Below are positions 37,401 to 55,355 of a stretch of 64,000 nucleotides of DNA, piece by piece. Both the position numbers and the translations under genes were made by a program. Below the pieces are notes generated by a model. That model did no database searches. It worked only from the letters and a program-made list of their open reading frames with translations, and was not told the origin of the DNA. The stretch is taken from the NCBI GenBank assembly GCA_053919585.1, contig CM132794.1; one strand, written 5' to 3'. Within the stretch, counting starts at the first letter, position 1; each line of letters begins with the position of its first letter. The stretch comes from Euprymna scolopes. Lineage: Eukaryota.

Positions 37401-38879
37401 ATCAAAAGAAAAATATACCGCGAGCAGAGGCAATCCATTCATAGCAGATAATGCTACAAAAGATGTAAACTGGAATAAATTGCAGTGAAAAATATAAATC
37501 ACCTTAAAAGCATAACATCAAACAAATATAAGAGAAACCAACAATGTAGATATTAAAAAGATTACTTCAAGGCTACGACACCGATCAAGTTACCTGATAT
37601 GATACTTATTTAGTCAGACAGGATAAAAATACCGATGATAAAGAATATGATACAACTTACTATGTAAGTATAGGGTTTTCGTAAAGTTGAAAAGATAATG
37701 CAGTAAATTGCATTCAGTTTGCTGTTTACTTACAGTTCTGTAAGAAGTTTTGTGATTATGTCTGTTTATTAAATTAAAAAAAAACAGTGAATATAACTTT
37801 AAATATAATACAGATAGGACAACTGCGAATATCTCAAGCACAAACGAATGGGAGTAATATGTGAGTTAATAATTATCTGATAATCTGGACAGCCCGTTTA
37901 ACAAGTAAATAGAAGAATTGGCGTAAATATAACCACAATTAAATGAAATGGAACTGTGATCCGCTTATTAGGCGTGTAAAAGAAGTGACAAAACGATTAT
38001 TCTCAACATGTCAATGCACGAAAACCCAACTACGGAGTGTAACAATAAGAATATTGTACACAGAGTATTAGTAAATAGTAACTAATTGAAAAAAAAAGCA
38101 ACAGCTTGTCTGATTAATAACACGAGTGGAAAGGTTTGTCGAAAGGGAAGCTACACTAGAACAAGAATGAAAACTAGTATATTTTTAAACACACCCAAGT
38201 AATCTGTTGCAAAATACAATCGATTATTAAGCATAGTTCATGCAAAATACAGTCGATTATAAAGCATAGTTCATGCAAAATACAGCTTGACACATCTCTA
38301 CTTCTTTATAAAATAACCTTTCTGTGTGTTTAAGTACTCGTTATATATGGACTTTAAAAGAGATTAACCTACTTGTTTTAATTTCACACAAATAGTACTT
38401 GATGTTTCTAGGTGTGTACGTTCGTTAGTTTGTATAAGAATGCTTTCGATACGTATCGAAAATCGATAATCATAGCAATCTGATTAACGAAAGATAGTCG
38501 AATTTTTACGAAAGCAAAAACTTTGATACCATCACACATGTATGTCAGACTATTAAATACTGCACAAACATAAACGCCTAGTCTATAAAAACAACTGTAT
38601 TTTGGTTTTAATACACGGACGTGTACAGTACTTATGTTTAATTTTGGAGCGGAATTGAACCATGATAATTTTACGTTTTAAACATTAGATATAATTGCTA
38701 TGAATTAACAGAGGTTTCTTCACGTTGAAATGTTGACAATAATGTAGGAAAATATATCATACTTCCTCCCACTAGTCAATAAGGGGTACACAAGAATAGG
38801 CAATACTCGTCCATTTTTAATTATATTTAAACCAATCGAAGTAGAGAAGGCGTTCTATCCGAGACAATGTATGCCATAC

Positions 38880-38955
<76 letters not shown>

Positions 38956-39089
38956 CATGGTTTTCTTGGGGGTACACATCTTTATTAAGCCAATTATGAA
39001 GGGAAGGTCTATTCCATCGGAATTCATTGTATATTTAAAAAAAGACCGAAGAGAAAAAGAAAATGGATAGAGACTAAAAAATAAATGTA

Positions 39090-39660
39090 GGGGAATAGAA
39101 AAAATCAAAACGAGCCAATTGACATGTTTCGCCCTCACTCATCCAAATTGGAATCGAGGGATTTATTTTTTTCCTTAATGATAAAATCTAAAAAAGAGAC
39201 GGGAGAAAGAGCAATCGTATGGGGATGAATTTTAGAGGCCGATCACGTTCAAACCCCACAATCAGTCCTTTTGCTTACAAAGGGAAGGCTTCCTAAGGCG
39301 GACGTGAACAGTCTCCAAGAATTTTCATGATATACGGAGTGAGCTCGACACAATACAGAGAAAGTGTCGATGCTGAAGTTCGTAGCACAATCTCGGTATT
39401 TAATAAAGTGGTCCGTTATAGCGGATCCATATGTGTTGTTTACAGCGTCGGTACGTAGGAATGTTCCATTCCTGATTTTGCTCGGTACATGTTGTATGCG
39501 ACTTACCAATTTTAAAGACGTTCGACCTACCTCATCGGCACCGCAACCACATTTAAATGAAGAAATGGCATTAATAATATGATGAGGGGGTAGAACATCT
39601 TTTTTATTATAGCTAATTTTTCGATATCTGTAATCCGAACGGCCGACCTTCAAAATCATA
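39090..39660 (-). mobile_element. Penelope-like element 3' part (GIY-YIG endonuclease and pLTR region)
   Basis: KDVLP..FKCGCGADEVGRTS..RIQHVP..SAITDH..C..FSVL matches PLE GIY-YIG. A hammerhead-like motif lies downstream. Confidence 0.85.
39115..39151 (-). ncRNA. Degenerate minimal type I hammerhead ribozyme
   Basis: CCAATT-tgGATGA-GTGAGGGC-GAAA-CATG-TC-AATTGG: perfect 6-bp stem I and palindromic stem III, but the CTGA box is mutated. Confidence 0.7.
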
Positions 39661-39959: not shown

Positions 39960-40990
39960 TACTACCAATATGTAAATATACAGGAGAATACAAAGACATC
40001 TAAATATTCACATCAATAGTTATCGGGTTCTCACCTAGTTTACACCTATATTCCGGTATCTTTCGACAAGTTACTTATTTTGTTGGAAAGATCCGGCCCA
40101 TTTCTTGAGTATTAGTGAAAATACATATTTCAATGAAAGCTAAAAAATTTATATAAAATGCAATGTTTGCTATGTGCACGTGAAATCTTTCAACGTTATC
40201 AAAATTAAAAATGTTTACTCAAAGAGAAATACGTTCTAAACTTAAGCAAAAGAGGAACCGTATTTAAAATAAGTGTCACCTACTATGATTAAACAATATT
40301 TACCTGATCTATCGAAATCAGCAAACGAAAGCATCACAAATATTACTTAGAAAACTTAATGCCACAGATAAGCGTTGTTAAGATTGTATGTGAATTTTAC
40401 GAAGAACAGATAACCCTGAGTGTACTAAAGAAACGTCGTTTCTAATTCAATCCGCCCATGTTTATTTAATTTTGTTACCTAAGTATAGTCAATTATATTT
40501 GTTTTCTTTTTCATTTCGTTAAAAAAAGTCGGTTTCATTTAACCACGCTAAACTTTTCAGCAATCATTATTACTATTGCTAACAAATTATTTAAAAATAT
40601 GATATCATTCGAAAATAATTTATAAACACTTTTGGAAAACTTATGCAGTAGGTTTTCCGTCCCATATGTGACCTCTGTGTGTTAAAACGTTTTATGTAAA
40701 ACTATTTAAAAAAAAGTTTAAGTATTGAATATCAACTATTATTTCTATAAAAATTGATATTAACCGAAAATTTGGAAAAAATATTGCATAAATTTAAGCA
40801 AAAAAAATTATTCATACATGAATTCCTATAAAACAAAAAAAAAGTTTAAAAAGATGACAACAGTTTTATGCAACAAATAAAGTGCCCAAGAAATTAATCA
40901 TAATCAAGCTATGCTGATGAGGAGTAAGGCTCTGAAACACGCGTGTCCGTAGATTAATGTTTTAAAAATAAATAAATAAATAAATAATAC
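39960..40990 (+). mobile_element. Heavily decayed second Penelope-like element 3' half
   Basis: Scattered motifs in PLE order (VGK..FL, FNHAKLF, ICDLCVLK), ending with a hammerhead and an (AAAT)n tract. Confidence 0.5.
40909..40952 (+). ncRNA. Minimal type I hammerhead ribozyme
   Basis: CTATG-CTGATGA-GGAG(TAAGG)CTCT-GAAA-CACGCGTG-TC-CGTAG: full catalytic core, stems I and II paired with G-U wobbles, palindromic stem III, and GUC cleavage triplet ending at 40947. Confidence 0.9.
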
Positions 40991-41130
40991 GTCCAAATAA
41001 AAAATGGACGACTTTCTAAGAAAAACACCGGTTCTCTAGGGCAGATACATAAACATTACTATCGATTAAAAAATCAAAACGAAAAGCATTTTAACAAATA
41101 AACGATGAAAACGAAGCAGTAAATCGTCTA

Positions 41131-41235
41131 TGGCAACATAGCGGGGGGATTAGGGCGCTAGACTGAAATACATAAGGTCCAAAGTTTGAATCCTACCAAC
41201 AGTCAAGCTACGCTGATTGGGAGTAGAGCTCCGAA
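41131..41235 (+). mobile_element. tRNA-derived SINE head or tRNA pseudogene
   Basis: A-box-like TAGCGGGGGGATTAG, an anticodon-arm-like segment and B-box-like GTTTGAATCC at tRNA spacing. Confidence 0.5.
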
Positions 41236-55068: not shown

Positions 55069-55291
55069 TTTTTTTTTTATTGTGACACGATCAAAAGATG
55101 GGGTGCCGACCACGGATTAAGACCGTTTCACTGACCCTCGAGAGAAAGATAGACCGCGATAGTTTCTTAACCTGGTAGTTTACCTCGCGGAACATACAGC
55201 GTCTCGGCTTCCCCAATAGTCACCCATCTGGTACTGTCAAGCTCAGCGTTGCTAAACTTCGGTGATCTGACGATAACCGGTGTATCAACGT
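55069..55291 (-). mobile_element. 5S rRNA-derived SINE (SINE3-like): 5S head, ~115-nt body, poly(A)
   Basis: Minus 55291-55195 reads ACGTTGATACACCGGTTATCGTCAGATCACCGAAGTTTAGCAACG...GATGGGTGACTATTGGGGAAGCCGAGACGCTGTA (5S). A non-5S body and an A10 tail (55069-55078) follow. Confidence 0.8.
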
Positions 55292-55355
55292 AATTGATTA
55301 TTATTTATGATTATCTTAAAAAGGGAAACTTTGAAAATGCTGTGCAACAATATAT

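What the first reader, a model, noticed from the sequence alone, without database searches (positions are those of the whole stretch)
40909..40952. Intact minimal hammerhead ribozyme surviving in an otherwise eroded Penelope-like element
Seen: all core nucleotides (CTGATGA, GAAA, GTC), paired stems I and II, a palindromic stem III (CACGCGTG) and an (AAAT)n tract just downstream. Known: PLE pLTRs carry minimal type I hammerheads that typically cleave as dimers through a palindromic stem III. Inference: the upstream coding region is barely recognisable while the ribozyme is complete. This may be chance, spread as a non-autonomous retrozyme-like unit, or host retention as an RNA-processing site.
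Basis: partly seen in the sequence, partly recalled or inferred. Interest (0 to 1): 0.75.

Follow-up and report, generated by a model that had tools for sequence, protein, structure and literature searches.

The report
Hammerhead ribozyme in short retroelement
The hammerhead ribozyme motif is real, but it sits in one decayed copy of a very abundant 299-base non-coding mobile element (a tRNA-promoter-plus-ribozyme "retrozyme" that inserts the way Penelope-like retrotransposons do), not in the broken Penelope gene nearby, and nothing suggests the host keeps it for its own use.

Summary
The motif at 40909-40952 (+) is as described: full hammerhead core, stems I and II, a palindromic helix III, and an (AAAT)n tract downstream. 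It is not a chance match. The genome holds 1,704 near-identical copies, and reversed controls give 0.

It does not belong to an eroded Penelope-like element (PLE). Homology with other copies covers only 40904-41235: one 299-bp non-coding unit plus 33 bp of a second, dead hammerhead. The only PLE remnant (38877-39608) lies 1.3 kb away on the opposite strand and is a separate 5'-truncated insertion.

Family copies carry tRNA-type A and B boxes just 5' of the ribozyme. They form partial tandems and inverted pairs, and their 3' ends sit at two fixed A-rich sites abutting (TA)n. These are PLE-style insertion marks. The kind is known (Schistosoma Sm-alpha, animal non-LTR retrozymes).

The window's ribozyme is no better kept than the rest of its unit (3/44 versus 18/208 changes). 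About a third of unselected copies still have an intact motif, and the stems show no covariation. Host retention is therefore unsupported. The same ribozyme is shared by subfamilies with diverged bodies, which points to selection on the element itself.

Expression could not be tested. This scan has already met this family on other DNA of this genome.

The parts
40904..41235 (+). One copy of the repeat family: a full 299-bp unit (u1-u299 = 40904-41202) plus the first 33 bp of a second unit. Non-coding (longest stop-free stretch 43 aa), GC 0.37.
   Evidence: BLAST against 29 loci found through the ribozyme and 29 found through the body. Coverage is 26-48 loci deep inside 40904-41235 and zero outside.
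40909..40952 (+). Type I hammerhead motif. Stem I 40909-13/40948-52, core 40914-20, stem II 40921-24/40930-33 with loop 40925-29, GAAA 40934-37, 10-nt palindromic helix III 40937-46, predicted cut after C40947.
   Evidence: It differs from the family's commonest sequence at 3 of 44 positions. Two are CpG-to-TpG changes that turn C-G pairs into wobbles; one is in loop II.
40953..40986 (+). Spacer with a T-run (T4 here, T5 in most copies) followed by (AAAT)n. Position u83 (40986) is the commonest 3' end of family copies.
   Evidence: In one search, 35 of 87 arrays end at u81-90, almost always directly abutting (TA)n.
40987..41128 (+). A/T-rich body of the unit, including the second preferred 3' end of the family (u181-190, about 41084-41093).
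   Evidence: 23 of 87 arrays end at u181-190.
41129..41202 (+). Decayed tRNA-type promoter module. The box A remnant is at 41139-41149 and the box B remnant at 41183-41193. Neither still matches the consensus in this copy.
   Evidence: Most copies read TAGCGGAGTGG, then 34 nt, then GGTTCGAATCC. The A-to-B pattern is found 18 times in 58 loci, 0 in reversed controls and 0 in the window. ARAGORN and the Rfam tRNA model do not call it a tRNA.
41203..41235 (+). Start of a second unit: stem I 5' strand, a mutated core (CTGATTG instead of CTGATGA), and stem II, cut off after GAA. This is a dead, truncated hammerhead and a possible PLE-type 30-40 bp 'tail'.
   Evidence: 3 differences from the commonest sequence, two of them in invariant core positions G8 and A9. 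The tail concept comes from PMC8557442 and PMC11167929.
38877..39608 (-). NOT part of the element. A separate 5'-truncated PLE copy (C-terminal endonuclease region and 3' UTR) ending in (TA)n at 38883-38952.
   Evidence: 18,123 first-look candidates in the genome; longer copies hit RVT_1 weakly.

Best explanation
The hammerhead is the ribozyme module of one old, inactive copy of a short non-autonomous retroelement. The family unit is 299 bp and non-coding. It reads: tRNA-type box A and box B, then the hammerhead, then a T-run, then (AAAT)n, then an A/T-rich body. My reading of the life cycle is as follows. Transcripts longer than one unit are made. Two hammerheads pair through the 10-nt palindrome ACACGCGUGU and cut after GUC, releasing unit-length RNA. 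Multimeric or circularised RNA is then reverse-transcribed and inserted by the enzyme of a Penelope-like element, starting at internal A-rich sites and landing in (TA)n microsatellites. Shown here: the anatomy, the copy number, the insertion marks and the decay pattern. Inferred: self-cleavage, circular RNA, Pol III transcription and the PLE partner. The window copy itself is most likely dead. Both promoter boxes are mutated. Two stem pairs are weakened to wobbles, including the conserved 10.1-11.1 pair. The neighbouring hammerhead it would need for dimer cleavage in cis is mutated in the core and truncated.
For: Repeat limits are 40904-41235 with nothing shared outside. The unit is 299 bp and occurs in tandems with that period (L008). 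Near-modal hammerheads number 1,704, the tRNA-like 34-mer 895 and a body 34-mer 513, with reversed controls 0. First-look candidates for body queries number 1,866 and 3,212. In 87 arrays from 58 loci, 45 exceed one unit. The 5' starts are spread out. The 3' ends cluster at u81-90 (35 arrays) and u181-190 (23 arrays) and almost always abut (TA)n, and inverted neighbours are frequent. These match published PLE insertion hallmarks: partial tandems, an inverted 5'-truncated copy, a 30-40 bp tail, (TA)n targets (PMC8557442) and internal initiation of reverse transcription at two sites (PMC11167929). The window's own PLE fragment also ends in (TA)n. The A-to-B box pattern with canonical 34-nt spacing occurs 18 times against 0 in controls. 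The helix III self-duplex is -16.1 kcal/mol, whereas the monomer helix III is destabilising. Decay looks neutral. In the window copy the changes are 3/44 in the ribozyme and 18/208 in the body. Intact 3' ribozymes occur in 10 of 29 body-selected copies. Non-modal bases are 0.066 per site in the ribozyme against 0.038 in the body. There is no covariation. The permissive core position 7 is split roughly 50:50 between T and A. After correcting for how often each segment is structurally present (85:70:59), the ribozyme 34-mer is retained 1.6-2.3 times more often than neighbouring segments. On contigs C1-C14 only 9 of 98 exact ribozymes adjoin an exact tRNA-like segment. So subfamilies with diverged bodies share one ribozyme.
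Against: Rfam does not recognise the motif at its thresholds. The tRNA origin rests on promoter boxes only; ARAGORN finds something only at 70% stringency, where 13.5% of shuffles also score. The T5 run 12 nt after the cut site should stop Pol III, yet copies read through it, so Pol III may not make the transposition template. No autonomous PLE with this ribozyme was found. The abundant PLE family sampled here carries a different motif, and only 1 of 58 loci has any PLE-like ORF nearby. The window copy is atypical: its 3' end is at u33 and is not next to (TA)n. The body-selected sample was chosen on the body, which biases body divergence downwards.
Confidence: 0.85

Rival explanations
1. The hammerhead is what remains of the pseudo-LTR of an autonomous Penelope-like element whose ORF has eroded.
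For: PLE pLTRs do carry minimal hammerheads (PMC4209133). A PLE endonuclease remnant lies 1.3 kb away. Animal retrozymes are thought to derive from PLE pLTRs (bioRxiv 10.64898/2026.07.22.740005).
Against: The PLE remnant is on the opposite strand and ends in its own (TA)n. No PLE homology exists between 39720 and 40903 or beyond 41235. Fifteen PLE loci hold no copy of the unit, and their 3' UTR has a different hammerhead-like motif. Of 58 unit loci, 57 have no PLE ORF. None of about 200 listed ribozyme sites forms a same-strand pair 2-5 kb apart.
Confidence: 0.06
2. The family is a plain linear Pol III SINE: a tRNA-like head, a hammerhead that trims the 3' end, and a T-run terminator. On this reading no circular or multimeric RNA stage exists, and the tandems arise at the DNA level.
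For: Intact A and B boxes with tRNA spacing sit directly 5' of the ribozyme, and a T5 run follows it. Short copies made only of the tRNA-like 3' part, the ribozyme and the tail exist (L002, L020, L022, L030).
Against: Most copies include 140-230 bp lying beyond the T-run and before the boxes. Forty-five of 87 arrays exceed one unit, with permuted starts. Copies ending at u181-190 read straight through the u83 end and the T-run. There is no cluster of 5' ends at the expected Pol III start around u225.
Confidence: 0.07
3. This particular copy has been retained by the host as an RNA-processing site.
For: The core is complete, and the two stem changes are wobble-preserving transitions.
Against: The ribozyme is as diverged as the rest of the unit. 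About 34% of unselected copies are equally intact. The partner ribozyme and both promoter boxes are dead. Both stem changes are ordinary CpG-to-TpG decay and cost about 4 kcal/mol. There is no covariation.
Confidence: 0.02
4. The motif is a chance match in A/T-rich DNA.
For: Rfam gives no hit, and the fold z-score is 0.22.
Against: There are 1,704 copies against 0 in the reversed control, and 1 against 0 with the strict descriptor.
Confidence: 0

Closest known systems
Sm-alpha / Sj-alpha SINE-like retroposons of Schistosoma (Ferbeyre et al. 1998; Laha et al. 2000; as summarised in PMC6765202)
   Same: A short (about 300 bp) non-coding unit in tandem and dispersed copies. A Pol III-type promoter sits directly upstream of a type I hammerhead, so that the promoter ends up at the 3' end of the cleaved RNA and at least two units are needed for propagation.
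   Different: No sequence comparison with Sm-alpha was made. The present family has a longer palindromic helix III, a T5 run right after the ribozyme, and explicit PLE-style insertion marks ((TA)n targets, inverted partners).
Metazoan non-LTR retrozymes (Cervera and de la Pena 2020, PMC7229834; Li, Clavereau and Pollet 2026 preprint)
   Same: 170-400 bp units, low GC (0.35 here), a type I hammerhead per unit, tandem arrangement, no ORF, and co-occurrence with PLEs. The proposed route is self-cleavage, circularisation by a host ligase and reverse transcription into tandem cDNA.
   Different: Circular RNA and expression were not shown here. A tRNA-type promoter module is not part of the published description. 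Most copies here are dispersed 1-2 unit insertions rather than long arrays.
Minimal hammerheads of PLE pseudo-LTRs (Cervera and de la Pena 2014, PMC4209133; Lunse et al. 2017)
   Same: A hammerhead with a short palindromic helix III, expected to act as a dimer. Helix I is 5 bp. It is massively repeated in an invertebrate genome.
   Different: It is not in a pLTR: there is no adjoining RT/endonuclease ORF. Helix II is 4 bp as in canonical metazoan type I motifs, not the 6-8 bp with a bulge described for PLE min-HHRs.
Plant LTR retrozymes (PMC4918200)
   Same: A non-autonomous element with a hammerhead in each terminal repeat. A full-length copy here (u1-299 plus u1-83) also has a ribozyme in an 83-bp terminal direct repeat.
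   Different: Plant elements use type III hammerheads, true LTRs, a PBS and PPT, and Gypsy machinery. None of these is present here.

Membership tests
Hammerhead ribozyme, type I | Conserved core (C3 U4 G5 A6 N7 G8 A9, G12 A13 A14, A15.1-U16.1, H17) | tested here: met
   All present at 40914-20, 40934-37 and 40946-47. Across 72 family copies, position 7, the one permissive position, is the variable one.
Hammerhead ribozyme, type I | Three helices around the core, with helix I open | tested here: met
   Helix I has 5 bp and helix II 4 bp. Helix III is stable only as an intermolecular 10-bp duplex (-16.1 kcal/mol). In the family, 92% of cells pair, against 15-53% for slid controls, but there is no covariation.
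Hammerhead ribozyme, type I | Rfam RF00163 gathering score | tested here: not met
   No hit on the window copy at E<=10. A better copy scores 14.1 bits against a gathering score of 34. The model expects a hairpin helix III.
Hammerhead ribozyme, type I | Self-cleavage after H17 | tested here: inconclusive
   There is no assay and no reads. The indirect evidence is modest: among about 44 (TA)n-adjacent 5' junctions, 4-7 start exactly at the first base after the cut, and two loci do the same at inverted junctions.
Metazoan non-LTR retrozyme | Short non-coding unit (170-400 bp), low GC, one type I hammerhead per unit | tested here: met
   The unit is 299 bp with GC 0.35 and a longest open stretch of 43 aa.
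Metazoan non-LTR retrozyme | Tandem arrangement of units | tested here: met
   Forty-five of 87 arrays exceed one unit, and L008 has about 3.4 units with a 299-bp period. The window copy has 1.11 units.
Metazoan non-LTR retrozyme | Expressed as unit-length linear and circular RNA | not testable with these tools
PLE pseudo-LTR | Flanks an RT plus GIY-YIG ORF on the same strand | tested here: not met
   the only PLE stretch in the window is 38877-39608 on the minus strand, and 57 of 58 unit loci lack a PLE ORF.
Sm-alpha-type SINE-like hammerhead retroposon | Pol III type 2 promoter (boxes A and B) directly 5' of the hammerhead | tested here: met
   Met for the family: 18 intact A-to-B pairs with 34-nt spacing in 58 loci, against 0 in controls. 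Not met in the window copy, where both boxes are mutated. Promoter activity was not tested.
tRNA-derived SINE | Recognisable tRNA-related head (cloverleaf or tRNA model match) | tested here: not met
   ARAGORN finds none at default to 80% stringency. At 70% it of 5 copies, but 13.5% of shuffles also score. The Rfam tRNA model gives no hit at E<=10 on 166 nt.

The most novel reading that the evidence does not exclude
The family may be a true SINE of Penelope-like elements. On this reading it is a tRNA-promoter head fused to a hammerhead-plus-tail module, and that module is what the PLE enzyme recognises and where it starts copying. This would explain why the ribozyme stays constant while subfamily bodies drift by 15-25%, and it would give a natural system for finding what PLE reverse transcriptases need in their template. 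The unit boundary u1 coincides with the 3' end of the tRNA-like module, so tRNA-processing enzymes might also shape the RNA.
Probability: 0.3. Interest if true: 0.5.

Novelty: new member of a known kind. Interest (0 to 1): 0.25.

Why it matters
For this locus it matters little. It is one decayed copy among thousands, and the idea of a ribozyme preserved by the host does not hold. For the family, the combination of features is a compact natural example linking Sm-alpha-type SINEs, animal retrozymes and PLEs. Those features are a tRNA-type promoter, a dimer-dependent hammerhead, two fixed internal 3' ends and (TA)n targeting. The family could be used to ask what PLE enzymes recognise in an RNA template. 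This scan has already reported the family several times in this genome.

Tried and rejected
Rfam at gathering and at E<=10 gave no hammerhead on the window copy and only a sub-threshold hit on a better copy.

ARAGORN and the Rfam tRNA model did not call the tRNA-like part.

Pfam on the window ORF 39249-39659(-) gave nothing. Its PLE identity came from longer genomic copies instead.

I looked for an autonomous partner. Fifteen PLE loci lack the unit and carry a different motif. The flanks of 58 unit loci share only unrelated repeats.

Covariation in the stems was no better than in shuffles.

Clustering 29 ribozyme-selected copies into subfamilies was too noisy, because truncated copies gave many singletons. 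I relied on genome-wide 34-mer counts instead.

I tested for 5' ends at the cleavage site. The excess is only modest and is confounded by microhomology with (TA)n.

For the non-coding unit I used only column tallies and commonest short words that exist as natural copies. N stretches were left untouched, and I met no human-like contig.

Full report
**Observation**

The sequence at 40909-40952 (+) reads as a complete type I hammerhead.
- Stem I is CTATG paired with CGTAG.
- The core is CTGATGA.
- Stem II is GGAG paired with CTCT, with a 5-nt loop.
- GAAA follows, then the palindrome CACGCGTG, which with its flanking A and T makes a 10-nt palindrome.
- GTC ends at 40947.

A T4 run and an (AAAT)n tract follow.

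A relaxed core pattern hits once in the window, against 0.03 expected. A stricter descriptor of my own requires stem I of at least 4 bp, stem II of at least 3 bp and a palindromic helix III. It hits once in the window and never in the reversed window.

Rfam does not report it at gathering or at E<=10. A better-preserved copy gets a full-length but sub-threshold alignment to Hammerhead_1: 14.1 bits against a gathering score of 34. As a monomer, the hammerhead fold is worth -2.6 kcal/mol against an alternative minimum of -9.5. The 10-nt palindrome pairs with itself at -16.1 kcal/mol.

**What the motif belongs to**

The genome is 5.9 Gb. It holds 506 sites within three mismatches of the window's 34-mer and none in the reversed control.

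I aligned the window against 29 of these loci. Homology is confined to 40904-41235 and stops sharply on both sides. That stretch is one 299-bp unit (u1 = 40904, u299 = 41202) plus 33 bp of a second unit. The second hammerhead is mutated at two invariant core positions (CTGATTG) and is cut off after GAA.

The unit is non-coding, with GC 0.35. A query made only of the body finds 1,866 first-look candidates. A body from a more distant copy finds 3,212.

**The nearby Penelope-like element is a different insertion**

The ORF at 39249-39659 (-) is the C-terminal part of a hugely repeated protein, with 18,123 first-look candidates. Longer copies of that protein weakly match RVT_1.

In the window only 38877-39608 on the minus strand belongs to it: the endonuclease region and 3' UTR, ending in (TA)n. 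It lies 1.3 kb from the ribozyme unit and points the other way.

Other evidence separates the two:
- Fifteen loci of this PLE family contain no copy of the unit.
- Their 3' UTR carries a different conserved hammerhead-core-like motif.
- Only one of 58 unit loci has any PLE-like ORF nearby, from another family and on the other strand.

The picture of a ribozyme outliving its own element's ORF does not apply.

**Anatomy of the family**

In most copies the 75 bp before the hammerhead carry TAGCGGAGTGG, then 34 nt, then GGTTCGAATCC. These are perfect matches to the Pol III box A and box B consensus at tRNA spacing, with an anticodon-loop-like CTGAAAT between them. The combined pattern occurs 18 times in 58 loci and never in reversed controls. 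ARAGORN and the Rfam tRNA model do not recognise a tRNA. I therefore call this a tRNA-type promoter module rather than a proven tRNA derivative.

After the hammerhead come CTGTTTTT and then (AAAT)n.

Across 87 arrays in 58 loci:
- The 5' starts are scattered.
- The 3' ends cluster at u81-90 (35 arrays) and u181-190 (23 arrays), both A-rich.
- The 3' ends almost always abut (TA)n.
- Forty-five arrays are longer than one unit.
- Inverted partners are common.

These are the published marks of PLE integration: partial tandems, an adjacent inverted 5'-truncated copy, a 30-40 bp tail and (TA)n targets (PMC8557442), and reverse transcription starting at two internal sites of the RNA (PMC11167929).

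Copies that end at u181-190 read through the u83 end and the T-run, so the template must have been longer than one unit.

The window copy is atypical. It ends at u33 without (TA)n. This is either a PLE-type tail or a later truncation.

**Is the ribozyme specially preserved?**

In this copy it is not. It differs from the family's commonest sequence at 3 of 44 positions. The body differs at 18 of 208. Two of the three ribozyme changes are CpG-to-TpG transitions that turn C-G pairs into wobbles, one of them at the conserved 10.1-11.1 pair. Together they cost about 4 kcal/mol of stem stability.

I also looked at 29 copies chosen through the body alone.
- Ten still have an intact 3' hammerhead by the same test, and 15 have an intact core.
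- Non-modal bases are 0.066 per site in the ribozyme (position 7 excluded) and 0.038 in the body. The sample was chosen on the body, and the ribozyme has 5 CpGs in 44 nt, so this shows no excess conservation rather than faster decay.
- Stems show no covariation beyond shuffles.

**Selection acts on the element, not on the locus**

Genome-wide, sites within three mismatches of the commonest 34-mers number as follows, all with zero in reversed controls:
- the hammerhead, with position 7 free: 1,704
- the adjacent tRNA-like segment: 895
- a body segment: 513

These segments are structurally present in a ratio of 85:70:59 in the sampled arrays. After that correction the ribozyme is retained 1.6-2.3 times more often.

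On contigs C1-C14 there are 98 exact ribozymes and 48 exact tRNA-like segments, but only 9 adjacent pairs are exact in both. Copies found through the ribozyme have bodies only 70-90% identical to the window's.

One ribozyme sequence is thus shared by subfamilies whose bodies have diverged. The only freely varying core position is N7, which is known to be permissive. This is what selection on active master copies predicts, followed by neutral decay after insertion.

**Mechanism and its status**

The anatomy, abundance, insertion marks and decay pattern are shown. The following steps are inferred from the literature on Sm-alpha (as summarised in PMC6765202), animal retrozymes (PMC7229834) and PLEs:
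- transcription (perhaps Pol III)
- dimer self-cleavage after GUC
- ligation to circles
- copying by a PLE enzyme

There is weak indirect support for cleavage in vivo. Among about 44 (TA)n-adjacent 5' junctions near the site, 4-7 begin exactly at the first base after the predicted cut. Two loci show the same at inverted junctions.

One point is unexplained. The T5 run 12 nt after the cut site should stop Pol III, yet inserted copies include what lies beyond it.

**Comparison and verdict**

The closest known systems are the Schistosoma Sm-alpha/Sj-alpha SINE-like hammerhead retroposons and the metazoan non-LTR retrozymes, which a 2026 preprint (10.64898/2026.07.22.740005) derives from PLE pLTRs.

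The family is a new member of that kind. The locus is an ordinary dead copy.

Earlier notes of this scan on other pieces of the same genome reached the same reading. I had formed mine before looking and checked each element here.

Noticed in passing
window 39108-39150 (-), and L062-L076: The 3' UTR of the abundant PLE family carries its own conserved hammerhead-core-like motif: stem I CAATT/AATTG, TTGATGA with U at core position 3, GAAA, palindrome CATG, TC. The 8 nt between the core halves cannot form a helix II hairpin; an upstream CCCTC could pair with the GAGGG inside it. The window copy is mutated to TGGATGA.
   Followed up: partly
window 38883-38952 and the 3' flanks of most family copies: Both the PLE fragment and the ribozyme-unit copies end directly against (TA)n microsatellites. 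The genome is full of (TA)n, and many repeats insert there.
   Followed up: partly
window 55191-55308 (-): A 5S rRNA-like sequence above the Rfam gathering score (46.6 bits).
   Followed up: no
genome-wide list; L011, L012: A subfamily has GTA instead of GTC at the cleavage triplet (H17 = A, still allowed) and CATG-type variants of helix III.
   Followed up: no
family coordinates u1-10 and u244-263: The 5' starts of arrays cluster at u1-10 (14 arrays) and at u244-263 (14 arrays). The first cluster coincides with the 3' boundary of the tRNA-like module; the second lies inside it, just after box A. The cause is unknown.
   Followed up: no
family coordinates u56-60 (window 40960-40963): A T5 run (T4 in the window copy) sits 12 nt after the predicted cut. 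It looks like a Pol III terminator, yet most inserted copies read through it.
   Followed up: no
L073 6242-6279 (-): Another hammerhead-like motif with palindrome CACTAGTG lies about 800 bp upstream of a 435-aa PLE ORF fragment. It failed my strict stem test.
   Followed up: no
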